Shown: positions 1 through 27,340 of the stretch, piece after piece
How positions within the stretch are numbered: the first letter of the stretch is position 1
How the letters are laid out: every line of letters starts with the position of its first letter
From: Scyliorhinus canicula
Lineage: Eukaryota
Assembly: GCF_902713615.1 (NCBI RefSeq)
Contig: NC_052152.1
Span: forward strand, 149,594,815 to 149,658,814
Direction: 5' to 3'
DNA length: 64,000 nt
Translations under genes and position numbers: made by a program
Notes under the pieces: model-generated
The model's database searches: none
What the model was told of the DNA's origin: nothing
What the model saw: only the letters and a program-made list of their open reading frames with translations

Positions 1-2757
1 GTATAATAGATTGCCATAAAACGAGAGGTAGAATTGTACCTGATTGACTTTTACACTAAAACTGTGAACTCATAATGGGTCTGGTGATGATTTAGCTGAT
101 CCAAGTATTTTAAATGAATGAAGTTGACCGAATAAGATTGTTTCAGTAATTTTTTACAGGCCTCAGCTGCCCTTTGATACTCAGTGCTGTATATTGTAAC
201 TTTAACAGAAACTACCTCCTGATTGTGGGCAAGCTTCTTCACTTTTGCGATATTGAACAGACATGCTATTTGAAAATGGGATTCAGACATCTGGATCCAG
301 ATTTTCATGGAGTCAGGCTGAGTGGGGTGGTTCTTGCAAAAAGCAGGTTCGGCTTGATTCAAGGATTCCCACCCCCATTCCCATTTCTGGCGATTTTAAC
401 CAGTGTGGGATAAGGGGCTGTTAGTGATCCTGCACAGAGCACTCTCACTCTTGATGGCTCTATTATGGGGTTGGGCACTTCAACCCCCTTCCTGCAATGT
501 TAATGGAGCTGTGCCCATCCTGTAGGTAGACATGATTCACAGCATCTTAGAGGATTTGTTAACCACAGGGGAAATGAAAACAAAAACACCATTCAACGTT
601 CACTTTGAAATGCATTGTCCCTCTTACAGTTTCATAAAGCCGTCAAATAATCAAAATCATTCATATTACCAATGTCAAAAAGCTGGTATCCACATCACAC
701 CTCTTAATCTTGTGTAAATAAACTTACAGGCAATGCATAAGACCCTCAATGAAAGATCTGGCTATTACAAGGTAATAAATATGTAATTCCAACTCTCCTC
801 TGAAACAATGTAAACATTCCCAGTGAGTCCATCTGAAAAACTATTCTGTTTTAACTGCATCTGTGAAAATATGTCACAGATGACCTTGTTACGAAGCTTG
901 GCAGTGCTCCAACAACAAGCAATCCACTTAACTTTCAACAGTCTATCTATATCCGGTTATAGAGTAGAGGGATAGATTTGTTTGATTGACATATTTATTA
1001 TATTTCATACTCTGTGATCTTGGAATTAGTTATTCCTTCTTTTTTTATGGTTTTCCAATGCCTATGTGTATTTATTTAACCAAAATTAAGAGGTATAATA
1101 TAGAGAGTAACATTTTGCCATTGATATTATGAATGGTTGTGATTGATTGATATTTTTTAAAGTTGTAAACCGAGCAGTAGTGTTAACAATAGAATTTCAA
1201 AGCTTCCTTGGTTATGTCAGTTTCTTGAGCATTTTGAAGACTTGCCAGGCTTGCCAATGATTCTTCAGGTGCTGGACATCACGGAGCCTGAGGAAGCATG
1301 GAGAACATGAAGGGAGAATGGGAGATATGAGGAGGAATGAGGGCATAGAGGGGCATAACAGAAATAAAAGGCCATGGAGGAAGCTGGAGGGGCATTGGGG
1401 TGGATGGAGGTTGAGGGGCCGGAGAGTTTAGGGCTTGAGGACCTGACATTCAGTGTTATAACTGGACCGATGCTCCACTGAATGGAGGTGGCCAATCCAG
1501 TCTTTGGTCCTGTCGCTGCAGTCCCATCCCACTGGCTCCACAAAGGAAATTTCAACACTTACCATTCAGGATTTCTTACATCTGCAGACCAGCTTTTAAT
1601 GAGTGCTCATGCACCATCTGCCCTGAAAGCAGAAGGACTTGACAAGTTTACGTAGAACTGATAATACCATAGCTTCAGAATTAACCAGGAATCATTCTGG
1701 CAAGTTTATGTGCAATCAATCCTTATGTTCCCTCCTTTGCTGACACATTGACTGGCATATGCATTTGTTCAATGTATCCTTTGCCATTTGCCTTAACTCC
1801 CTCATGCAATATGGTACTTGTTAATCTTTCCTCACTGATTAAAATACGGAGATTATTTCAACTGAGGCAGAGAGGGCTAAGAAAATATTTAATTGTTTTT
1901 TTCAATTATGAGGGATTCTGTTGGCGTGTTATAACAAGACAACGAAAGGAAAGGCAGGCAAAGACTTTGTTCACCTAGCCCAGCAATCGAGCTCAATGCA
2001 TTTCTATTGACAATGAATCCTATTTGTTGGCAAGAACCAGTTGAGTTCCTTCGGAAACCCATTAAGATTTCTTCTTTCACCGCCCATGCAGGTAATCTGT
2101 TTGACTCATTATCAACTCTTTAGGAGAAAAAAATTCTCCTGTGCTTCCAATTTTAATTTGTTGTCTTAATACTTGATCTTAAATTCTATACAGGGCAGAA
2201 ATTATTATTTGGGTTCAACTTACTTTGAACACCTTTATCAGTTCCCATCTTGATTTTTATCCTCTCAAGAAAGTAAAATCTCGTGTCAACAATTTCTTTA
2301 GTTTATGTTGAAGATCTACTTTTGCCAGGTGTTTGTCACAAGATGCGTATTTTTGACTTGCCTTAGCAATTTTTTTTTTCGGTCTTGCATCTTTTTTATA
2401 ACATCCTTTTGGACTCAGGAGAAAGCATTAACCCTTTCTGTAATTTATTTCTGTCCCTGCTGCATAAAGGCGCTTCTGAGAAGATTGGTTACGCTCACCA
2501 TAAATCATGTTCCCTGACTTTCTGCAGCACCTCGTTAACAACCCTGATCTTCCTTTACCGAGTAGGCTTTGCAGAACATTGCGCTGTTAAAAGCCATCCA
2601 TTATTTAAAAGGTTTGGCTGGTTAGAACTTTTAAATTATTGGCATGCATTAATTGATCTTAACATTCCATTCAACAATGCATTGCCCAGTATTTGAGTGT
2701 ACAGTATAAGATTGCTCCGAAGAAAACAGGATAATCAGGGATTAACAAGTCTGATTT

Positions 2758-2993
2758 ATTTTATTTTATTTTTTTCTTAAATTTAGTGTGCCCAATTCAT
2801 TTTGTCCAATTAAGGGGCAATTTAGCATGACCAATCCATCTGTCCTGCACATCTTTGGGTTGTGGCGGCGAAAACCCACGCAAACACGGGGAGAATGTGT
2901 AAACTCCATACGGACAGTGACCCAAAGTCGGGATGAAACCTGGGACCTCGGCGCCGTAAGGCTGCAGGGCGAACCCACTGCGCCACCATGCTT
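2758..2993 (-). mobile_element. tRNA-derived HE1/V-SINE-like SINE (short-tail type)
   Basis: Shares the core GGTCACTGTCCGTGTGGAGTTTGCACATTCTCCCCGTG...AAATTGCCCCTTAATTGG with many other copies; flanked by the 13-bp direct repeat ACAAGTCTGATTT (2745, 2994). Confidence 0.85.
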
Positions 2994-3983
2994 ACAAGTC
3001 TGATTTTGTTATTTCATTTATCATATATAAGTGTTTCTTGGTTCAATCTCAATGCTAAGACTACCAGTCATGCTCCCAATAGTTTCAATGAGGTTATGCA
3101 AAAGAATAAATGGACCTTCAGTCACACCAGTGTCTGTATTTCAATAATATGCCATATTTAGAACATTGGGGATACAGGATGCCTTTATCCTGTTTTAACT
3201 CAACTAAAGGTTCACCTTAACCAAATATGCTTGTCCAATCTTCTTCTATCCCTCTCCACATGCACTAACTACATAGCTGAATGAGAAGAATGATCTCCCT
3301 GCTTGCTGTTCCTGTCATGCTGATGCGATTGATGGAGGTCACCTTCGAAGATGCCGAAGTCATTCCTTCGATAACCAGCTGTGCTACTCACTGAGAACTA
3401 CGTCCTCTGTTTACACATCATTACGGTTAGCTGTTTTGAAGTTGCAGCATTCTATACCCTGATTAACCAGTTGACTTTATCATAACAAATCTAACCGATG
3501 TTTTCATCTCCTCAATGTGACTCATCCAGGACAGAGTTAGTCATTTTCTCCAATGAACCAATCTCAACAGATGTATAAAACCATTAATAGATGATAAAAA
3601 GCTGATTAAAATAAAAGGAGCAAATTAAAGGCAAGAGTAGACGTATTAAAGTTCTTCAATAATTTCTTTACAGCATTTTTTATTCATGTGTATTTCTGTT
3701 GGAGAATTTGGTTGCTATTCTCATAATTCTGAAATATCTCCACTGGTGGAGGTGGTGCTGAGTTGAAATGTATTGATCCCAATAGGCATTGGCGAGGAGA
3801 AATAAATGAGCTTGAAAAAGGCACTTACAATTTGACTGCATAAAACTCCCAGCTGATTAGCGATTGATTGCAGAATTAATGATCTACACAGGACAAACTA
3901 TTACAGATGGAATCAACATCCCTGAATTGATTCTCGTCTGATAGGAAGCCATCTTAACCAAAATAAATGCAGTTAGAAACTAT

Positions 3984-4677
3984 GGGCGGAATTCTCCGCT
4001 CCCCACGCCGGGTGGGAGAATCGCGGGAGGGCCAGACAACTCACGACACGCCGTTCTGGCACCCCCCGCGATTCTCCCACCCCCCGCTCGGAGAATCGCC
4101 GCTCGCCGTTTTTCACGGCGACCGGCGATTTTCCGGCCCGGATGGGCCGAGCGGCCTGACGTTCCTGACCTGTTCACGCCGGCGGCAATCACACCTGGTC
4201 GCTGCCGTCGTGAACATGGCGGCAAAGCTTTGTTGTGGCTTGTGGGGGGGCGGAGAGGGGAGTGAGCACCACAGCCGTGCTTGGGAGGGGACTGGCCCGC
4301 GATCGGTGCCCACCGATCGTCGGGCCGGCGTCTCCAAGGGACGCACTCTTTCCCATCCGCCGCCCCGCAAGATCAAGCCGCCACGTCTTGCAGGGCAGCG
4401 GAGGAAAAGACGGCAACCGCGCATGCGCGGGTTGGAGTCGGCCAATCTGCGCATGCGCGGCTGACATCAATTAGGCGCCGCAGACGTGTTATTCTCGGCG
4501 CGCTGCCTTGATGCAAGCATCAAGGCCCGGCGGCCGGGATTTACGGATCGCCGCTCCTAGCCCCCTGGGGGGGGGGGGGTGAATAGGGTGCGAGGTGCGG
4601 CATCCGAGGCCGTCGTGAAACTCGGCTGAGTTAACGACGGCCTTCCCGATGCCGCGCGGGAGAGGAGAATTCCGCCC
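3984..4677. mobile_element. GC-rich PIF/Harbinger-type MITE
   Basis: Perfect 14-bp TIRs GGGCGGAATTCTCC/GGAGAATTCCGCCC; 3-bp TSD TAT; no coding motifs. Confidence 0.9.
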
Positions 4678-9735: not shown

Positions 9736-9908
9736 GGTTGCACAGCCACATTTATGAGTTTTCTTTTTGTCATTCGTGGGATATGGACATTGCTGGCTGG
9801 GCCAGCATTTATTGCCCATCCCTGAGGGCATTTAAGAGTCAACCATATTGTTAATGTTATGACACTTTTGTAAATATAGTCCTCTTTCACTTTTATGTGG
9901 TGTGATGT

Positions 9909-10250
9909 GGGTGGCACAAAAGCACATTGGTTAGCACTGTTGCTTCACAGCTCCAGGGTCCCAGGTTCGATTCCCGGCTTGGGTCACTGTCTGTGCGGAG
10001 TCTGCACATTCTCCCCGTGGCTGTGTGGGTTTACTCCAGGTTCTCCGGTTTCCTCCCACGGTCTAAAGGTGTGCAGGTTAGGTGGATTAGCTATGCTAAT
10101 TTGCCCTTAGGTTAGGTGGGGTTACTGGTTTATGGGGATACGGTGGAGGTGTGGGCTTCGGTCGGATGCTCTTTCCAAGGGCTGGTGCAGACTCGATGGG
10201 CTGAATGGCCTCCTTGTGCTCTGTAAATTCTATGATCCTATGATTCTATG
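9909..10250 (+). mobile_element. HE1-like SINE (long type with CR1-like tail)
   Basis: tRNA head (GGTTCGATTCC), core, and tail GATGGGCTGAATGGCCTCC...TTCTATGA. Confidence 0.85.
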
Positions 10251-12249: not shown

Positions 12250-12734
12250 GAACCTTGATATAGTTGATGTGCATCATTCACCCAATATTTAAAAAAAAAT
12301 AATGTGCAGTCTACCACTTGTCTGAGTGAAATTTGGGCCAGGAACATCATAACCCTCATAAACTGCCCTAACAGTGACAGACCAATGCGCCGCATCGCGA
12401 TCAGAGCTCAAAGTTACGCCACGCCATTGGCATTTCCATCCCAAGTGAGATATAACATGCAGTAGAAGGCTTTCTGAAGGAGCAAGGCTCTTTTTTTTGG
12501 AAGGGGTCTGCTTAACCATCAAAATGTATCTTGCCTGGTGCCTTGGTGACGCACCCTGTGAGATAATTGAGCACTTCATGACCATCGGGTCCACGCTAAG
12601 AAGAATCAGCATGCGACTATCATCAGCGCAGAAGCTGCTACACTTGAGGCGACAGATAAGATCAAGGAGGAATTCTGCACCAACCTTGGGCATCCCCCAA
12701 TCGGAGTCACAGAAGGTAACAAATGGATTTAAAA

Positions 12735-13010: not shown

Positions 13011-13240
13011 TTTTTTTTTAATAAATTTAGATTACCCAATTATTTTTTCCAATTAAGGGGCAATTTAGCATGGCCAATCCACCTACTCTACACATTTTTG
13101 GGTTGTGGGGGCGAAACCCACGCAGACACGGGGAGAATGTGCAAACTCCACACGGACAGTGACCCAGAGCCGGGATCGAACCTGGGACCTCAGCGCCGTG
13201 AGGCGGTTGTGCTAACCACTAGGCCACCGTGCTGCCCCCC
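13011..13240 (-). mobile_element. HE1-like SINE (short-tail type)
   Basis: Near-consensus copy flanked by the direct repeat CCCCCTCGTAGATTTT. Confidence 0.9.
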
Positions 13241-13402: not shown

Positions 13403-13530
13403 ACATAAGAACATAAGAACTAGGAGCAGAAGTAGACCATCTAGATCTTTAAGCCTGCTCCGCCATTCAATGAGATCATGGCTGATCTTTTGTGGACTCA
13501 GCTCTACTTTCCTGCCCGAACACCATAACC
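13403..13530 (-). mobile_element. CR1 LINE extreme 3' end
   Basis: (CATAAGAA)n tail plus GCTCCGCCATTCAATGAGATCATGGCTGAT, homologous to 56722-56800. Confidence 0.75.
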
Positions 13531-14464
13531 AGTCAATGATGGACATGTCCCACACCAAGGTGGAGTCGCCAGGACTGGCAGCGCAAGATGACTGAAAGGC
13601 CTCCGGAGCTCATTCCACCTGCCCCTCTGTCCCATGGAGTCACCCAGTGCCCATGGGCACCATCAAGGAGGAGGAAGCACTGGAGGAAAACCCTCAGCTG
13701 CTATCAAGAAGACAACGGAAGTCTCCAGTTCTCCAGTTCTTCAGAATCCCCCGCGCCTGACACTGGCACATGTCAAGAGCACCGGACATAACAATGGCGA
13801 TGCCAGTGACATCAATAAGTCATCCAGGGCCCCCCTGGCTCCAGGCTCTTCAAAGGACATCCACCAACGGCATCAAAGGCCACAGGGTGCGGAAGGCAGC
13901 AAGTTGCCGCCACCTCTGATGTGCACCCTGGGGACACACCTAGATGTAGCAGTGGACCATGAAAGAGCAAGGAGAGATATGAGCACTGAGGGGACACTGG
14001 TGAGGGCACTATCTCTAGCTCGGGTGAATGGAAATCTTTCACAGTAAAATGTTCACGATTAAAACATGTCACACCTCATACTCCTGTAGTCTCTAATAAC
14101 ACTAATCTTCACTGTGGGCCTGCCCTCACCCCTTCTTCCATGTTTCCCTGCCCCTGGCATAGTGGTCCATGATCAAATGTCCCCGATGCGGACCCCGTTC
14201 AGAGGATGATGTGAGGTGAGCGCGCTGTCAACAGAAAGATGGGAGTCAGACTTGAGCAGAAACTGAAAAGCACTAGAGCTTTCCTTACAGCAAGTTATCA
14301 TCACTCTCCTGCCTTGTGTGCTGACCTGCTGACTCTTGGACGGTGGTACAGGGTGGTCAAGGTGAGGGCATTGTGATGGGGGTGCAGGGAAGTGAGAGAT
14401 TGGTGGGGAGGAGGGAAATTGGTAAGGGGGATTGGGTGGTTACGCTGACGGATGCAGCTTGTCC

Positions 14465-15500
14465 TATGAAAATCTAGAGATGATGAAAGCATCTCTGGCC
14501 CTCCTAGCATGACGGACCCTTGACACCACCTATCTTCCATTCTCCAGCTCCTCCTCAGCCTCATTCTCCAGCACCTCCTTGCCTGCCTCCTCCTCCTCAG
14601 CTGAGGCCCCATGTCCCTCCTCCTGCAGCATGTCACTCTACTGCTGTGCCAAGTTGTGAAGGGAACAGACGACTACTACAAAGTAGGAGACCCTGTGGGA
14701 GGTGCACCCCAGGGCACCATGAGAATGGGCCAGGCATCAGAACCGCTGTTTCAGCAGTCCGATGCACTGCTCAATGACAGCACCAGTGGTAAAGTGGGCC
14801 TTACCATGACAGATCTCAGCTTCAGGATCAGGCCTCCACACCAGTGTCATCAGTCATGAACTCAGCGAGTATCCATTGCCCCCACGAGCCAACCCCACAT
14901 CCTAGGCTGGTCCTTGAAGACATCAGGGATGTCCGAGTGCCCCAGGATGTAGCCATCATACATGATCCCTGGAGTAGAACCCCTTCCTGTTGATAAAAGG
15001 CATTACCTGATTCCCCTAGGTGCACAGAATGACAGGAATGCCATCAATCACCCCCTGGTTGCAGGGCATCCCGCGATGGCAACAAACCCTGCGACCCAGG
15101 CATTGTGGTGAGCCTGGTCCAGCTTGAAGGTGACATAGTTGGAAGCCTGGGCAGAAAGAGCATCCATCACCTCCTGAATGCACCTGTGGGCTGTAGATTG
15201 TGTTATACCACACATATCCCTGCTCGAGCCCTGGAATGAACCATTGCCATAAATATTGAGGGCTGCAGTGAGCTGCATGGCCACCGGGATTTTGGTATCC
15301 TCCTCCTCCACCGAGTGCCAAATTGATGAGAACGTGGCACAGGTGCCACACTGTTTTTATGCTGAAACACAGTCTTCCGCACGATATGGTGTCCGTCAGT
15401 TCATTGAATGACCAACGATACTTGTACATCTTGCACCATTCCTGGCCTCCCCTTCTGAGTCCCTCCTTAGCCTAATGGATATCCAGGTCTTCAGGATGCG
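14465..15500 (-). pseudogene. Harbinger (HARBI1-like) DDE transposase, multiply disabled
   Basis: LTAALNIYGNGSFQ..SRDMCGITQSTAHRCIQEVMDAL; QGVIDG; FINRKGFYS; GWLVGGNGY; VIEQCIGLLKQRF*CL; CSLHNLA; acidic tail. Confidence 0.9.
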
Positions 15501-15899
15501 CGGCAGCCCTCTGCACATGAGGTGCCACCTCCAAGTCTGCGTTGTCACTGTTCCCTTCTCCAGTGTCTGCCCACCTCGTTTGCCACTAGCAGTGTGAGTG
15601 CAGCATCCGCGGGACCGATACCAGAAAACATTTTGATCTAGAACGAATTGGAGAGACCATCCAGGGGTACCGTGCTCAGGTTCCCTCCGCCGATCCGCAC
15701 ACTCACCCATTGGTCGTGAGGATATCCCAGTGCTGAAAACTTGCTCTTTCGTGTTTGATTGTTGGCAGCTGCGTCAATGGTGATGACGCTCCCAGAATTC
15801 AGGCGCACTGTTCAGGCATCAAAGTTTGCTTGACATGCAATGCACTAAACATCCTCCAGGCATGACACGTGTGCGCTCAGGGAAGCACTTGAGAGTTGA

Positions 15900-16644
15900 T
15901 TTTTTTTTTTAATGAAATGGTCAACACTAACAAAGATTTAAAAATCAACTAAGGAATATTCCACATATCACACTAACCATTAAACAACAAGGAAACGTCA
16001 CCGTTCCATATTGGTATCAATACAAAGTTATATCAGCTCATTATCACGAAAAAACAAATGCTTGGGTTCACCCCTCGCAAATTCCTCAACAGGAACAGGG
16101 ATAAGCCTGAGAATATGTTATCATGCCCAGATCTTTGTCATAAATATGATCTGTCCATCAATATGTGACTTGTTCCACATATCAGTGCCATTCTCCATCC
16201 AGGAGTCACAGCTGTGGAGGCCCTCCCACACGGCCCAATCTCACCGGAATCAAAATCCTGGCATCCACATATTCCACTGGCACCCAGGGTGCAGTTGAAC
16301 TTGACTTCCAGCGTGTTTAACACATGATGGCGTGTCAGTTATATGGCAGCACTCACCACACCAGCAACAAAAGCATCAGCAATCTGCGAAAGCATTTCTT
16401 CAAGGAGGTTGGTGGGTGGTCCATTTGGATCAATGTCATGCACCAGGGCCGCAGAGTTTTCTTGCTTCAAACTGGATTGCCTTCTGAACTCATACATCCC
16501 CCCTGAACTCGGTATTCCAGGACCAAGGTAACTCAGAAAAAAATTGTCCTTTCCGGCGACAAAAATGGAAGGAAACAGCAACAGCAGCCTCCAGACATCT
16601 ACAGCCACCAGCAGGACGAGTAAGCAGCAAACACAGCCAGCGGC
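15900..16644 (-). pseudogene. TAF12: Processed pseudogene of TFIID subunit 12 (histone-fold), with frameshifts and stops
   Basis: Spliced-together frames read GCMSSEGNPV*SKK / LVHDIDPN..LLEEMLSQIADAFVAGVVSAAI*LTRHHVLNTLEVK / VQLHPGCQWNMWMPGF / DSGEIGP...WRMALI, versus vertebrate TAF12 LVREVDPNEQLDEDVEEMLLQIADDFIESVVTAACQLARHRKSSTLEVKDVQLHLERQWNMWIPGF...RMALI. No introns; A-tract at 15900-15910. Confidence 0.9.
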
Positions 16645-21400: not shown

Positions 21401-22074
21401 CTTTCATTATTATATTTGCATTATTTTAAATTCTATAACTCATTTCATTTAAATATTATTACTTCCATTATTGTTATGGGCTGCCAGCATTTTCCCTGTT
21501 GTAAACCAGTGTGTTATTCTCGAGTAATAAAAATGGCAATGAAATAAAGTGCAGTCGGAGTTAGTGTTTGACCATCCTCTTGCAATATAAATAGCAACTG
21601 GTGAACCGTTCGCCAATGGCATTCATATTTTGAGATTGTAAAGTGTTTTACAGTAGTGCTGAAGTAGATTTTAGCTGTACAGTGCATAGTGAATGTTTTA
21701 TTTTGTGGAATATTTTCTCCTATTTAAATGTTCAAATATCCTATCTGACATAGAAGAATGAAAACAAGACCAAATTATTTGCAGTTTATTTAATTGAATT
21801 AGTCCAAATAGGTACTTATTTTAACTTTTATTTTGTTACCGCAGTGAAAATATGTGAAACCTCAAATGGTGACTTTAAATATCTTAGGGCAGTGTTTTTC
21901 ACAGGTTTTTTTCCCAGGACCCACATTTACCAATCGACCAACCTTCACGACCCACACCAGCCGGCCTTCATGACCCACAGCGGCTGACCTTCACAACCGA
22001 CCCCAACTGACCTTCATGATACTCCATTACTAATTACCTTTAATGTGGCAGGTGAACCTGCTTGGTCCTCACAA

Positions 22075-22783
22075 TCTCATTTGCTTTGTCATTCAATGTT
22101 ACATTTCTGCTGAGGTTTTAAGCTGACGATGTAGGTTCTCGTTCTATAATTTGAAAAAAATCAAGAGGTTTGTCCTTGAACTCGCTGTGCTTCAAATGTG
22201 TGGTGGTATGAATGTGAGCACTGCCATTGGTGCAGAGCATGGGTTTCCCATTGGCTCTGGCTGGTCATGTGCCTCTCGTCTGATTGGCCGGGACTAGTCA
22301 TGTGACTGCTCACCAATTGGTCGAGAGGCAAGTAGACCCCGCCTCGGAGGCGGGGTATAAGTACCCAGAGTTCCCGGCGGTCGGCCTTACTCTGTAGTCG
22401 ACCACCGGGCTAACAACTAGCTGATTAAAGCCACAGTTCGGATCCTAATCGTGTCTTGAATCCAATTGATGGTACTTCAAAATGCTTTTGAAGTTTTGAG
22501 GGTTTTAATCTAACATTTGCCAGTACTTCACTATATATAATACACATGGACTTTGCATCCTGATTTACATTGGTACAATTAACAAAGCCACACGTCAAGA
22601 AACATCTTTTTACTATTTTGTTCCCAATTTCAATTTCTTCTTAATGGGTTGTTCATCACAGGCCCTGAAACACTGTATACTGTACTGCTTCGTCCTATCA
22701 TGGACTCGCCAACAGATTCAGTTGTGAGATCCTGGCCTGTTTGTGTCTCTGGCCCTATTTTCCTTATTACAAAATAATTCATC
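22075..22783 (-). pseudogene. Charlie/ZBED5-like transposase N-terminus (BED finger), disabled and split by an LTR
   Basis: GFVNCTNVNQDAKSMCIIYSEVLANVRLKPSKLQKH|LKHSEFKDKPLDFF reads through once the LTR and one TSD are removed. Confidence 0.8.
22199..22479 (+). mobile_element. Solo LTR
   Basis: TG...CA ends, 5-bp TSD AAATG, CCAAT/ATTGG boxes, TATAAG and ATTAAA. Confidence 0.88.
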
Positions 22784-22879
22784 TTCAGTTCTTCACACAA
22801 TCCTGTTGCTTTCTTGCTGGCAGTTACAAAATGGAGGAATCTCTCTTCTGTAATTTCCTGCTCAAACCATGGATCACAG

Positions 22880-23223
22880 AATAGATCATAGAATTTACAA
22901 TGCCGAAGGAGGCCATTTGGCCCTTCAAGTCGGCACCGGCCCTTACAAAGAGCACCCTACTCAAGCCCACATATTTACACTATCCCCGTGACCCAGTCAC
23001 CCCCACTCAACCTTTTTGGACACTAAGGGCAATTTAGCATCGCCAGTCCACCTAACCTGCACACCTTTGAACCGTGGGAGGAAACCGGAGCACCCGGAGG
23101 AAAGCCAGGCAGACATGGGGAGAATGCACAGACTCCACACAGATAGTGACCCAGCCAGGAATTTAACCTGCAATCCTGGAGCTCTGAAGCAACTGTGCTA
23201 ACCACTATGCTACCGTGCTGCCC
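22880..23223 (-). mobile_element. HE1-like SINE (long type)
   Basis: Head, core and CR1-like tail present. Confidence 0.85.
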
Positions 23224-23296
23224 ACAGGTGCGTGACCTTCTCTCTGCCACCTCTTCTATCGTTTGTATCTTAAAGGCCGGCCGTGGCTGGCATTCT

Positions 23297-24151
23297 TTTG
23301 TTTTAACTTTGAAACTCTATTTTCAATACCCGATTTTTCCAAGTTTATGGTTTTTTATTGCTGAAAATTAAAGCAGTTTCAGTTGAACATTTGCATTCTT
23401 ACATTTACAAACAAACTTTGTTTCGAATAAAATCCGGATTTTGTTTTTGAAATTTAAACAAGTACAGACAGAAGTTTTTATTATTGTTTCTACTTTACAA
23501 ACTATGACTATAGACGAGATGGGGTAACTTGTCAAGCACACGCAATGCTACAATATTTCTTACTGATTCCACTGTATTGCAGTATCCATACATCCAAGTC
23601 ACCTCCCTCTCCGTTCTCACAAAAAGCACTTACTTCTTGGTTTCCAGAGTGTGGTGACACAAAGTGATGACTCTAGGTTTCCTCCAGTGTCAGCATGTGT
23701 CAGTCGTATTGACTGGCCTCATTTGATTGGTATTCTTCGCTGACAAACTTGGCCTGGTTTCCCTCTTACTGTCCAATAGCTGTTACTGCCATCACATTCA
23801 TCCACCCCGATCACGGGCTGCTGACCACTTCCCGACCCACACTTCAAGCCATGGGAGCACAAGTGGATGTTGTGCCGGCTGTTGAGTAGCTTCACCACAG
23901 AGCCGTAGGTCACATACTGCCGATCGGTGACAGGGGAGGAGCCGAGCAACGCTTGGAGGGCAAGCACCAGGGCTGAGCTCAGAGCAGGGGCCGTCACCAT
24001 GAGCATTGCACGGGCCCACCTGGCTGCCCATCAGCCTCTGTCCCACCAATCTCCCCCCGCCCCTCCCCACATGCATGGTGACCAGCACACAGCCCAGCTT
24101 CACGTCACCCTACCCCTCGAACGTCGCAGCCAATTGCGGCTGCCCGCAACA
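23297..24151 (-). pseudogene. SDF2: Processed pseudogene of stromal cell-derived factor 2 (MIR-domain ER protein; SDF2L1 not fully excluded)
   Basis: Signal peptide then VTYGSVVKLLNSRHNIHLCSH..GSGSGQQPV.GV...SNSYWTVRGK...PIK*GQSIRLTH..TGGNL/SHHFVSPHSGNQEVSAF.ENGEG.DLDVW. Intronless; stop plus frameshift; AT-rich 3'UTR with AATAAA (~23354-23359); candidate TSD GGCATTCT/GTCATTCT. Confidence 0.9.
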
Positions 24152-24319
24152 GTCATTCTCAAAAGCCGGTCGTGGCTGTTGGACACTCTTTCCTGCGATC
24201 GGGAAATCCACGGCCCTCCAGACGCCCGCCTGTGACCTACCCGTGGGTCATGACACTGTGTTCTAAAAATCTTGACTGAGGGGTTGTCTGCGGAATAGAC
24301 ATATCAGACACTAGCTACC

Positions 24320-25674: not shown

Positions 25675-26760
25675 AGAGAGACACCTGTCTGGAAGCTAGA
25701 GAGCAGTCTAGGCAGAGATTGTGAAAAAAAAAATACTGCTTTAAAATTCACCCGTGCAATACACCTGCTGGCTCAGGCAGAGGATGCAGCACATGTAAGT
25801 TCCTAGAAAGAGAAAACTACATCAGCTGGATTTAAACCTCTCAGATCTTAGATCTGCAAGGCTTTCATAACAGTGAATTTGTTTTTACTAGGCTGTGATT
25901 GACAGCTTACACACACCCAGCTCTCAGGATTGTTTTATGCAATTTCCCTTCACACTTGTGTGGATTTCAAGTAATCTGCAAACCACACATTTGTAAACAT
26001 CGAGCTATGATGACATCAAAGGTAGTTAAGTTCTTTCATCATAGAATTTACAGTGCAGAAGGAGGCCATTCAGCCCATCAAGTCTACACCGGCTCTTGGA
26101 AAGAGCACCCTACCCAAGGTCAACAACTCCACCCTATCCTCATAACCCAGCAACCCCACCCAACACTAAGGGCAATTTTGGACACTAAGGGCAATTTATC
26201 ATGGCCAATCCACCTAACCTGCACATCTTCGGACTGTGGGAGGAAACCAGAGCACCCGGAGGAAGCCCACACACACACGGGGAGGATGTGCAGGCTCCGC
26301 ACAGACAGTGACCCAAGCCGGAATCGAACCTGGTACCCTGGAGCTGTGAAGAGATTGTGCTATCCACAATGCCACCGTGCTGCAGAGAAACAAAGGAAGT
26401 GGAGATATCTGGTGGAGGGGGGATCTGGTGGGGGTGAGGTGGGCAGGATTTGCATTGAGATGGTCTCCATAGAAGAGTTACCTCCTTGTCCCACCGTGAG
26501 GTCCATTGCACCAGGGCCATGCTGGGAAATACCTGCACCAATTCTCACCCACGTGAATCCCAGCCCAGAGGACCAGAGATTCATGCAGTCTTGGAGAATC
26601 CAGTGTCCATTTAGTTATTGGATGCAAATGGGTCAATTTGACCTATTTGCATGCTCCCACTGACGCGAGGCGCGAACCTCAATGCCATCCTGTCTGTGGG
26701 ATGCGTCAGATTCTTCGCCATATCGAGAACTCCGCTACCATCGGCGGGTAGCGAAGAATT
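25675..26760. mobile_element. Non-autonomous DNA-transposon-like repeat (second copy at 63350-64000), interrupted by a SINE
   Basis: Shared GTGCAATACACCTGCTGGCTCAGGCAGAGG...GGCTGTGATT(G/A)ACAGCTT...GGATGCAAATGGGTC. Confidence 0.65.
26038..26382 (-). mobile_element. HE1-like SINE (long type)
   Basis: Head, core and tail match the family. Confidence 0.85.
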
Positions 26761-27017: not shown

Positions 27018-27340
27018 ACATAGAATTTACAGTGCAGAAGGAGGCCATTCGGCCCATCGAGTCTGCACCGGCCCCTTGGAAAGAGCACCCTATGGAAGCC
27101 CATATCCCACCCTATGCCCATAACCCAGTAACCCCACCCAACTAAACCCAACCTTTTTGGACACTAAGGGCAATTTAGTATGGTCAATCCACCAAACCTG
27201 CATATTTTTGAACACGGGAGGAAACCGGAGTACCCGAAGGAAACCTACCCAGACATGGGGAGAAAGTGCAAACTCCGCACAGACAGTGACCCAAGCTGGG
27301 AATCGAATCTGGAGCTGTGAAGAAACTGTGCTACCGTGCC
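27018..27340 (-). mobile_element. HE1-like SINE (long type)
   Basis: Head, core and tail match the family. Confidence 0.85.

What the first reader, a model, noticed from the sequence alone, without database searches (positions are those of the whole stretch)
21890..24274. SDF2 retrocopy packaged between the TIRs of a hAT/Charlie element
Seen: both TIRs and an 8-bp TSD (6/8 match) enclose a BED-finger transposase N-terminus and an intronless SDF2 copy with 5'UTR, signal peptide and 3'UTR. The copy is in the same orientation as the transposase and upstream of it, between two subterminal GCCGG(C/T)CGTGGCTG repeats, with a candidate TSD G(G/T)CATTCT. Inference: with both ends retained, the unit could have moved non-autonomously with its cargo, and the copy sits where the element's promoter would be expected.
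Basis: partly seen in the sequence, partly recalled or inferred. Interest (0 to 1): 0.75.

Follow-up and report, generated by a model that had tools for sequence, protein, structure and literature searches.

The report
Dead SDF2L1 retrocopy inside catshark transposon
An old, broken, intron-free copy of the catshark gene SDF2L1 (not SDF2) lies inside a decayed two-ended cut-and-paste transposon; this is ordinary unless the transposon moved with this cargo, which could not be tested here.

Summary
The intronless gene copy is real, but it derives from SDF2L1, not SDF2. Both introns of the Scyliorhinus canicula SDF2L1 gene are missing. Homology ends 11 nt after the parent's AATAAA and is followed by a short A-rich tail. 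The copy is dead: one TGA stop, a 2-bp frameshift and a 241-nt internal deletion.

The two ends do belong to one repeat family. Both recur, in the same order and orientation, in a second element 0.5 kb upstream of the SDF2L1 parent gene itself. That element carries a different processed copy (RPLP1) about 30-35 nt away in backbone coordinates. It is absent from the Mustelus orthologue.

- The outermost TIR and the 8-bp TSD are no better than alternative readings 16-20 nt further in.
- The BED finger has no Pfam, PDB or homologue support, so "hAT/Charlie" is unverified.
- Movement with cargo is untested.

The retrocopy and the family divergence have the same age (about 0.16-0.18 substitutions per site), so mobilisation stays possible.

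Unchecked notes of this scan report another SDF2-like-in-hAT copy and two RPLP1-in-hAT copies elsewhere in this genome.

The parts
21890..21940 (+). Left terminal region of the transposon-like element.
   Evidence: Window 21906-22015 matches L002 3509-3400 at 75% (E 4e-21). The L002 terminus is fixed at or before 3518 by the Mustelus orthologous site, and the alignment maps it to window ~21900.
21941..22016 (+). Subterminal 23-nt tandem repeats, 3.3 units, carrying the motif TCA(C/T)GACCCAC.
   Evidence: TRF and the repeat finder D1. The same unit is expanded to 25.8 copies in the L002 element.
22150..22460 (+). Unassigned promoter-like block (several CCAAT/ATTGG boxes, a GC box, TATAAG, ATTAAA), possibly a solo LTR or other nested insert. 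It ends where the BED-like stretch breaks off.
   Evidence: Read directly from the sequence. No match in the window or in the fetched loci. Not followed further.
22428..22640 (-).
   Evidence: Translation. No Pfam hit, no PDB hit, no homologue. The resemblance to Charlie/Buster-type N-termini is recollection only.
22884..23228 (-). Nested SINE, a later insertion.
   Evidence: At least 10 other copies in the window at 68-84% identity. K2P to its nearest copies is 0.21-0.22, about 0.10-0.11 per branch, younger than the retrocopy.
23229..23289 (-). Element backbone downstream of the retrocopy, including direct repeat R1 (23268-23289).
   Evidence: R1 and R2 match 19/22 (D6). Window 23227-23248 matches L002 2795-2816 (86%, E 0.038; 3 of 1000 shuffles).
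23289..23305 (-).
   Evidence: Homology to the parent stops at 23306, 11 nt after the parent's AATAAA.
23306..23565 (-). SDF2L1 3'UTR, running up to the parent's poly(A) site.
   Evidence: 78% identity to L002 13454-13717; K2P 0.22.
23562..24006 (-). SDF2L1 coding remnant: exon 1, exon 2 and the first 75 nt of exon 3, fused without introns. It carries a TGA at 23719-23721, a 2-bp deletion near 23673, and a 241-nt deletion at about 23565.
   Evidence: blastn against L002 exons at 4014-4185, 12454-12650 and 13138-13212. Translations. PDB 3MAL (SDF2-like) E 3e-11. Tree.
24007..24151 (-). SDF2L1 5'UTR. The 5' junction lies somewhere in 24143-24151, where homology to the parent and to the element backbone overlap.
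   Evidence: Collinear but weak match to L002 3891-4000 (6-17 of 300 shuffles). Backbone homology to L002 1888-1957 runs to 24143 (0 of 1000 shuffles).
24152..24258 (-). The homology-based right terminus is CAGTGTCATGACCCAC, ending at 24258.
   Evidence: Window 24258-24207 matches L002 1820-1871 (73%, 0 of 300 shuffles). The extension through 24143 is.
24259..24278 (-). Whether it is element or flank is open.
   Evidence: No homology to the L002 element beyond 24258. The CAGT at 24275-24278 and the T5 run are the only similarities to the left end.

Best explanation
An SDF2L1 messenger RNA of the catshark lineage was reverse-transcribed and pasted, by the target-primed mechanism of a LINE, into the subterminal region of a cut-and-paste DNA transposon copy. 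The insertion point is about 105-115 nt inside the element's right end. The element is probably an internally deleted, non-autonomous hAT-like element. This happened about 0.18 substitutions per site ago, after the Scyliorhinus and Mustelus lineages split, and at about the time the transposon family itself was diverging. Since then everything has decayed. The gene copy acquired a stop codon, a frameshift and a 241-nt deletion, a SINE landed next to it, and the transposon ends eroded.

Shown: mRNA origin, SDF2L1 parentage, position inside a two-ended family member, death of the copy, and relative ages.

Inferred: LINE-mediated integration, the hAT assignment, and non-autonomy.

Open: whether the element reached this locus already loaded. 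I put that at about even odds.
For: - Both parental introns (8.3 kb and 0.5 kb in L002) are absent. Exon order and 3'UTR are collinear with the parent.
- Homology stops 11 nt after the parent's AATAAA and is followed by TAAAACAAAAG.
- Short direct repeats of target sequence flank the insert.
This resembles the LINE-1 endonuclease preference TT|AAAA (established knowledge; the same motif is cited in PMC11195612).
- The copy falls in the elasmobranch SDF2L1 clade (92/95) and outside SDF2 (100/99).
- It is closer to Scyliorhinus than to Mustelus in the 3'UTR (K2P 0.220 vs 0.288) and in exon 1 (0.314 vs 0.403).
- Both element ends recur in L002 1820-3518 in the same order and orientation. That element is missing from the Mustelus orthologue, with a clean boundary.
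- Element-to-element K2P is 0.32-0.35, about 0.16-0.18 per branch. The retrocopy's own branch is about 0.18.
Against: - The A-rich tail is only about 10 nt and is impure.
- Three TSD readings compete: an 8-nt AGAATGMC pair, a 16-nt pair at 11/16, and the 22-nt R repeat at 19/22. Two family members cannot separate them.
- The 5' junction overlaps a stretch that resembles both the parent 5'UTR and the backbone.
- No transposase domain is detectable, so the superfamily is not established.
- Terminal inverted repeats are poor.
- No LINE source was examined.
Confidence: 0.78

Rival explanations
1. The reader's reading, which shares the capture step above: the retrocopy entered a master copy elsewhere, and the loaded non-autonomous element was then cut and pasted by a family transposase, so this locus is a daughter insertion of a Pack-type element carrying SDF2L1.
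For: - The retrocopy is as old as the family's own divergence, so the family could still have been active when it was loaded.
- Both family members I could examine carry a processed host mRNA (SDF2L1 here; RPLP1 in L002, Pfam Ribosomal_60s E 2e-15). The two cargoes sit about 30-35 nt apart in backbone coordinates, near the right end, and are co-oriented. That is unlikely under rare random hits. It is expected if loaded copies are the ones that multiplied.
- Unchecked leads only: scan notes s1-207397 (a second SDF2-like copy in a hAT), and s1-236537 and s1-198266 (RPLP1 in a hAT).
Against: - No second SDF2L1-loaded copy was seen by me. There is none in 93 kb of S. canicula sequence.
- The word search with the 95-aa ORF found nothing of similar length.
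- The exact ORF is not on record.
- Termini and TSD are too decayed to show a transposition footprint.
- A LINE target hotspot would also explain the two-of-two result. The backbone has A/T runs in an otherwise GC-rich region.
Confidence: 0.45
2. Capture without a LINE: after excision of an element, the double-strand break was repaired by copying, and the polymerase switched template onto an SDF2L1 cDNA or mRNA. This is transduplication by gap repair, as proposed for Pack-MULEs and for hAT filler DNA.
For: - The 5' junction shows an imperfect microhomology of about 8 nt between backbone and parent (GT.GC.GG).
- The internal 241-nt deletion is flanked by GGA microhomology.
- The L002 element has a 55-nt-arm palindrome next to its cargo, which is a sign of aberrant repair.
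Against: The copy is full length, running from near the transcript start to the exact poly(A) site with an A-rich tail and flanking direct repeats. That is the signature of target-primed reverse transcription, not of filler DNA.
Confidence: 0.07
3. The right-end block (24153-24258) is not resident transposon DNA. It is the first exon of a chimeric transcript that started in the family member upstream of the SDF2L1 parent gene, was spliced into the SDF2L1 5' region, and was retroposed as a whole.
For: - A same-family element lies 0.5 kb upstream of the parent gene in the same orientation.
- Its backbone has a donor-like ACT|GTGAGC exactly where window homology switches from backbone to parent.
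- An AGAACA/AGAATG pair flanks 24258...23297 behind a T5 run.
Against: - Homology to the L002 element starts exactly at that element's terminus (L002 1820), as expected for a resident transposon end and not for a transcript start.
- The left end of the same family lies 2.3 kb downstream in the correct orientation, which this model leaves to chance.
- The proposed acceptor has no pyrimidine tract.
Confidence: 0.05
4. There is no single element. The two ends are unrelated repeats that happen to bracket a processed pseudogene.
For: - The terminal inverted repeat is poor. The best inverted match between the ends is reached by 14 of 1000 shuffles.
- The TSD is ambiguous.
- No transposase domain was found.
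Against: The same two end blocks co-occur in the same order and orientation, 1.7 kb apart, at an unrelated locus. That whole block is absent from the Mustelus orthologue.
Confidence: 0.04

Closest known systems
Processed pseudogenes (LINE-mediated retrocopies of host mRNAs)
   Same: Introns are lost. The copy runs from the 5'UTR to the parent's poly(A) site, has an A-rich tail and flanking direct repeats, and is decaying neutrally.
   Different: The tail is very short and the TSD is ambiguous. It landed inside a DNA transposon, a few tens of nt from where a second family member carries another retrocopy.
hAT-mediated transduplication of histone H3 in Dothideomycete fungi (PMC6710886)
   Same: A housekeeping-type host gene sits inside a hAT-type element. 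In the fungi the loaded element multiplied to hundreds of copies, all of them inactivated.
   Different: Amplification is not shown here. The superfamily is unverified. The cargo is clearly an mRNA copy with UTRs and a tail.
Pack-TYPE transposons of plants (Pack-MULE, Pack-CACTA, Pack-hAT; PMC8903248)
   Same: A non-autonomous TIR element with host coding sequence between its ends.
   Different: Pack elements mostly carry genomic fragments, often with introns and from several genes. Here the cargo is one near-complete processed mRNA, in a vertebrate, with no proof of mobility.
Retro-DNAs of primates (PMC11195612)
   Same: Cross-talk between the LINE machinery and DNA-transposon sequence, with the TT/AAAA target motif.
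   Different: There, transposon sequence is itself retroposed and loses its TIRs. Here a host mRNA is retroposed into a transposon that keeps both ends.
SDF2L1 (ER stress-inducible MIR-domain protein with a C-terminal HDEL signal)
   Same: 74% amino-acid identity over 145 residues to S. canicula SDF2L1, and placement in the elasmobranch SDF2L1 clade.
   Different: It is truncated and broken, with no third MIR repeat and no HDEL. It is not a functional family member.

Membership tests
Processed (LINE-mediated) retrocopy | All parental introns absent and exon order kept | tested here: met
   Exons at L002 4014-4185, 12454-12650 and 13138-13212 are contiguous in window 23993-23562.
Processed (LINE-mediated) retrocopy | Copy ends at the parent's poly(A) site and is followed by a poly(A) tail | tested here: met
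   Homology ends 11 nt after the parent's AATAAA. It is followed by TAAAACAAAAG, which is short and impure.
Processed (LINE-mediated) retrocopy | Target-site duplication flanking the insert, at a TT|AAAA-like site | tested here: inconclusive
   Three candidates: AGAATGMC (7/8) behind TTTTG, a 16-nt pair (11/16), and the 22-nt R repeat (19/22). They cannot be separated with two family members.
hAT superfamily (Charlie/Buster type) | 8-bp target-site duplication | tested here: inconclusive
   In the window there are two rival 6/8 pairs. In L002, TCAGG occurs at both junctions and once in the empty Mustelus site, so the TSD is at least 5 nt, but 8 nt is not shown.
hAT superfamily (Charlie/Buster type) | Short terminal inverted repeats starting with YAG/CAG | tested here: inconclusive
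   CAGTG at 21890 and CAGTGTC (reverse complement) at 24258, plus an inverted CA(G/T)GACCCAC. The overall inverted match is weak (14 of 1000 shuffles). The terminal 16-20 nt are not conserved between the two family members.
hAT superfamily (Charlie/Buster type) | Transposase with BED finger, RNase-H-like catalytic core and hAT dimerisation domain | tested here: not met
   Only a 71-codon open stretch with a C..KPSKL..H-like motif is present. It has no Pfam hit at E up to 10, no PDB hit and no homologue. No other transposase remnant appears in three frames. An internally deleted element would lack these parts, so this does not exclude hAT.
Pack-type / transduplicating non-autonomous element | Host sequence lies between the two ends of one element family | tested here: met
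   The end blocks pair in two independent loci, and the cargo lies between them.
Pack-type / transduplicating non-autonomous element | Several copies with the same cargo and junctions at different loci, each with its own TSD | not testable with these tools
Only unchecked scan notes point to further copies.
SDF2L1 (versus SDF2) | Groups with SDF2L1 orthologues in a tree and matches the SDF2L1 locus at the DNA level, UTR included | tested here: met
   Chondrichthyan SDF2L1 clade 98/96 and SDF2/SDF2L1 split 100/99. The 3'UTR is 78% identical to the S. canicula SDF2L1 locus, while the SDF2 locus L003 gives only two short exon hits.
SDF2L1 (versus SDF2) | Intact three-repeat MIR domain and C-terminal HDEL | tested here: not met
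   Stop codon, frameshift and loss of L002 13213-13453. Pfam MIR is not detected on the pieces.

The most novel reading that the evidence does not exclude
A catshark DNA-transposon family has a subterminal zone, about 100-250 nt from one end, that repeatedly takes up complete processed host mRNAs in the transposase orientation (SDF2L1 here, RPLP1 in a sibling). The family then multiplies the loaded units. This would be a vertebrate 'Pack' system fed by retroposition rather than by genomic DNA, and it might be linked mechanistically to the family member sitting beside the SDF2L1 parent gene.
Probability: 0.2. Interest if true: 0.7.

Novelty: new member of a known kind. Interest (0 to 1): 0.42.

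Why it matters
As it stands this is a dead processed pseudogene nested in a dead transposon, which is routine genome debris. It matters only as one data point in a possible pattern. Both members of this transposon family that I could inspect carry a full-length processed host mRNA a few tens of nt apart in the backbone and in the same orientation, and the scan has flagged similar cases elsewhere in this genome. If loaded elements really multiplied, sharks would offer a vertebrate case of DNA transposons spreading retrocopied host genes. That route of gene duplication is well documented mainly in plants and fungi. A simple genome-wide junction count would settle it.

Tried and rejected
2. Word-based homologue search with the 95-aa ORF gave no hits. 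This is uninformative for longer SDF2L1 proteins because of the length window.
3. The same search with the 71-aa BED-like stretch gave no hits. Pfam at E up to 10 and PDB at E up to 10 were also empty.
4. Exact-ORF look-ups for the SDF2L1 and RPLP1 pseudogene ORFs were not on record.
5. A search for further family copies found none beyond the two described. It covered the window, 29 kb around S. canicula SDF2L1, 27 kb of Mustelus and 33 kb of Chiloscyllium.
6. The flanks of the element are unique in the sample, so no spanning repeat could define the empty site.
7. The scan's index searched by sequence and by relatives was blank.
8. My first reading of GTAAGA after the coding remnant as a retained intron-2 donor was rejected. 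That sequence is the parent's 3'UTR, brought next to exon 3 by the 241-nt deletion.
9. My first preference for the 22-nt repeat as the TSD was downgraded. Backbone homology to L002 runs past R2 to 24143, and a CAGCC start is a poor LINE target.
10. The chimeric-transcript model is kept only as a low-probability rival.
11. The first paper search was wasted because the prefix 'hat' matches 'hatch'.
12. In a script for the tree, the pieces of the broken gene were joined with X at the stop and at the frameshift.
Full report
WHAT IS THERE

On the minus strand, a 95-codon ORF (24006 to 23722) begins with a hydrophobic signal-peptide-like stretch. It matches the solved SDF2-like protein 3MAL at E 3e-11. 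Reading on, there is a TGA at 23719-23721, then GQSIRLTHADTGGNL, then a 2-bp deletion, then HHFVSPHSGNQEVSAFCENGEGGDLDVWILQYSG.

A full HMMER scan of 1.8 billion representatives gave 434 relatives, all of SDF2 or SDF2L1 type, with a best identity of 54-62%. A search with one full-length relative (P0009) returned the annotated SDF2L1 of Scyliorhinus canicula (P0167). Its genomic locus was fetched as L002, with a wider version as L005.

PARENT AND MODE OF ORIGIN

The window copy matches L002 in four collinear pieces:

| Parent segment | L002 coordinates | Window coordinates | Identity |
|---|---|---|---|
| exon 1 | 4014-4185 | 23993-23826 | 77% |
| exon 2 | 12454-12650 | 23832-23638 | 86% |
| first 75 nt of exon 3 | 13138-13212 | 23636-23562 | 85% |
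| 3'UTR | 13454-13717 | 23565-23306 | 78% |

Both introns (8.3 kb and 0.5 kb) are absent. A 241-nt stretch, covering the rest of the coding sequence and the start of the 3'UTR, is deleted between GGA microhomologies.

Homology ends at TTTCAAAGT, 11 nt after the parent's AATAAA. There the window continues TAAAACAAAAGAATGCC while the parent continues CATCGATC. Upstream of the ATG, a collinear but weak match to the parent's 5' region runs to about 24150. A transcript contig of another species (L001) has a 126-nt 5'UTR, so a 5'UTR of about 140 nt is plausible. This is a near full-length processed mRNA copy.

The SDF2 locus of Chiloscyllium (L003) gives only two short exon hits. In a maximum-likelihood tree the copy sits inside elasmobranch SDF2L1 (92/95; chondrichthyan SDF2L1 98/96). 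It lies on the other side of the SDF2/SDF2L1 split (100/99). For that tree only, the pieces were joined with X at the stop and at the frameshift.

AGE

K2P distances in the 3'UTR are 0.220 (copy to Scyliorhinus), 0.288 (copy to Mustelus) and 0.152 (Scyliorhinus to Mustelus). Exon 1 shows the same order. The copy's own branch is therefore about 0.18. It branched from the Scyliorhinus lineage after the split from Mustelus.

THE SURROUNDING ELEMENT

Nothing but the nested SINE (22884-23228) repeats within the window. The parent locus L002, however, holds a second member of the same repeat family at 1820-3518, about 0.5 kb upstream of the SDF2L1 start codon.

- Window 24258-24207 matches L002 1820-1871 (73%; 0 of 300 shuffles).
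- Window 22015-21906 matches L002 3400-3509 (75%, E 4e-21).
- Both matches are on the same relative strand and in the same order.
- The 23-nt subterminal repeat has 3.3 units in the window and 25.8 units in L002.
- The Mustelus SDF2L1 locus (L004) lacks the element. Orthologous alignment resumes at L002 3519 (TCAGGAGGG against Mustelus TCAGGCGGG). TCAGG also stands at L002 1819-1823.

So the two ends bracket one mobile unit.

TERMINI, TSD AND SUPERFAMILY

Homology between the two members begins exactly at window 24258 (CAGTGTCATGACCCAC) and L002 1820 (CAGGGTCGCGACCCAC). At the other end, L002 3518 maps to window about 21900.

Neither exceeds what a few offsets would give by chance. In L002 the TSD is at least 5 nt, and 8 nt is not shown.

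The BED-like stretch (22640-22428) has no Pfam, PDB or database support. Its likeness to Charlie/Buster N-termini is recollection only. No further transposase remnant is visible. 'hAT/Charlie' is therefore a reasonable guess, not a finding.

JUNCTIONS OF THE CARGO

Backbone homology to L002 continues from the right block through R2 to window 24143. The window reads ...AATGACTGTTGCGGG and L002 reads AATGCCGACTGTGAGCGGG (0 of 1000 shuffles). It overlaps the start of parent homology (GTTGCGGGCAGCC against GTCGCTGGCAGCC). The 5' junction therefore lies in 24143-24151 with imperfect microhomology.

Three TSD readings remain open:
- a 16-nt pair at 11/16, which is about the identity expected at this age;
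- the 22-nt R repeat at 19/22.

R1 has no significant counterpart in L002. More family copies are needed to decide.

THE SECOND ELEMENT IS ALSO LOADED

L002 2152-2427 encodes a 92-aa acidic ribosomal protein fragment (Pfam Ribosomal_60s, E 2e-15). It is contiguous, continues after a premature stop to the conserved acidic tail, and is followed by an A run. By recollection this is RPLP1.

It lies between the arms of a two-level palindrome. The inner arms are 1921-1975 and 1991-2045 (55 nt, 87%). The outer arms are 1893-1916 and 2531-2554 (24 nt, 88%). In backbone coordinates this places the RPLP1 copy about 30-35 nt from the SDF2L1 insertion point. It is co-oriented with SDF2L1 relative to the element.

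So both family members I could inspect carry a full-length processed host mRNA in the same subterminal zone. Chance is an unlikely explanation. A LINE target hotspot and preferential multiplication of loaded copies both fit.

RELATIVE TIMING

The two elements differ by K2P 0.32-0.35, or 0.16-0.18 per branch. This equals the retrocopy's own branch of about 0.18. The SINE is younger, at about 0.10-0.11 per branch. Loading therefore happened while the family was diverging, and mobilisation with cargo is not excluded by age.

WHAT COULD NOT BE DONE

Exact-ORF look-ups were empty.

The scan's own notes mention a second SDF2-like copy in a hAT (s1-207397) and two RPLP1-in-hAT cases (s1-236537, s1-198266) on other pieces of this genome. 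They also mention a multi-copy TAF12-in-Harbinger case in this window (s1-198229). These are unchecked leads and were not used as evidence.

VERDICT

This is a real but dead SDF2L1 processed pseudogene, nested in a real but eroded two-ended DNA transposon of unverified superfamily. The composite is ordinary as a single locus.

Two things deserve a junction count on the full assembly. One is the recurrence of processed host mRNAs a few tens of nt apart in the backbone of the two family members examined. The other is the unexplained coincidence that the second member sits beside the SDF2L1 parent gene. The family was seen only twice in about 93 kb of S. canicula sequence, so I estimate the chance of that coincidence at very roughly 0.3-10%.

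Noticed in passing
L002 1820-3518 (S. canicula LR744030.1, upstream of SDF2L1): A sibling of the window's element sits about 0.5 kb upstream of the very gene whose retrocopy the window's element carries, in the same orientation. It holds an RPLP1-type processed pseudogene and a SINE, and it is absent from the Mustelus orthologue. Whether this proximity is chance or mechanistically linked is unexplained.
   Followed up: partly
L002 1893-2554: Two-level palindrome: inner arms 1921-1975 and 1991-2045 (55 nt, 87%), outer arms 1893-1916 and 2531-2554 (24 nt, 88%). The RPLP1 copy lies between the inner and outer right arms. It looks like an inverted duplication of the backbone with one arm loaded and the other empty.
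   Followed up: partly
L002 2885-3478 versus window 21941-22016: The 23-nt subterminal unit (consensus GTGGGTCGCGAAGGTCGGCTGGC) is expanded to 25.8 copies in one element and has 3.3 copies in the other, so it behaves as a minisatellite inside the transposon.
   Followed up: yes
window 22150-22460 (+): A 300-nt block with several CCAAT/ATTGG boxes, an 18-nt inverted repeat, a GC box, TATAAG and ATTAAA. It is promoter- or LTR-like and lies antisense to the BED-like stretch, which it seems to cut off. No match in any fetched sequence.
   Followed up: no
window 22884-23228 and at least 10 other places (e.g. 26038-26383, 9906-10237, 27019-27333): An abundant shark SINE family at 68-84% identity between copies. 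ARAGORN finds no tRNA in the copy nested here.
   Followed up: partly
L002 1945-1952 and window 24143-24155: The sibling's backbone reads ACT|GTGAGC (donor-like) exactly where the window switches from backbone to SDF2L1 5'UTR. This suggested a chimeric spliced transcript, which I judged unlikely.
   Followed up: partly
window 13533-16644 (scan notes s1-198279, s1-198229): A second host-gene retrocopy (TAF12, in a Harbinger element) lies under 7 kb away. Another agent reports it as multi-copy. I did not examine it.
   Followed up: no
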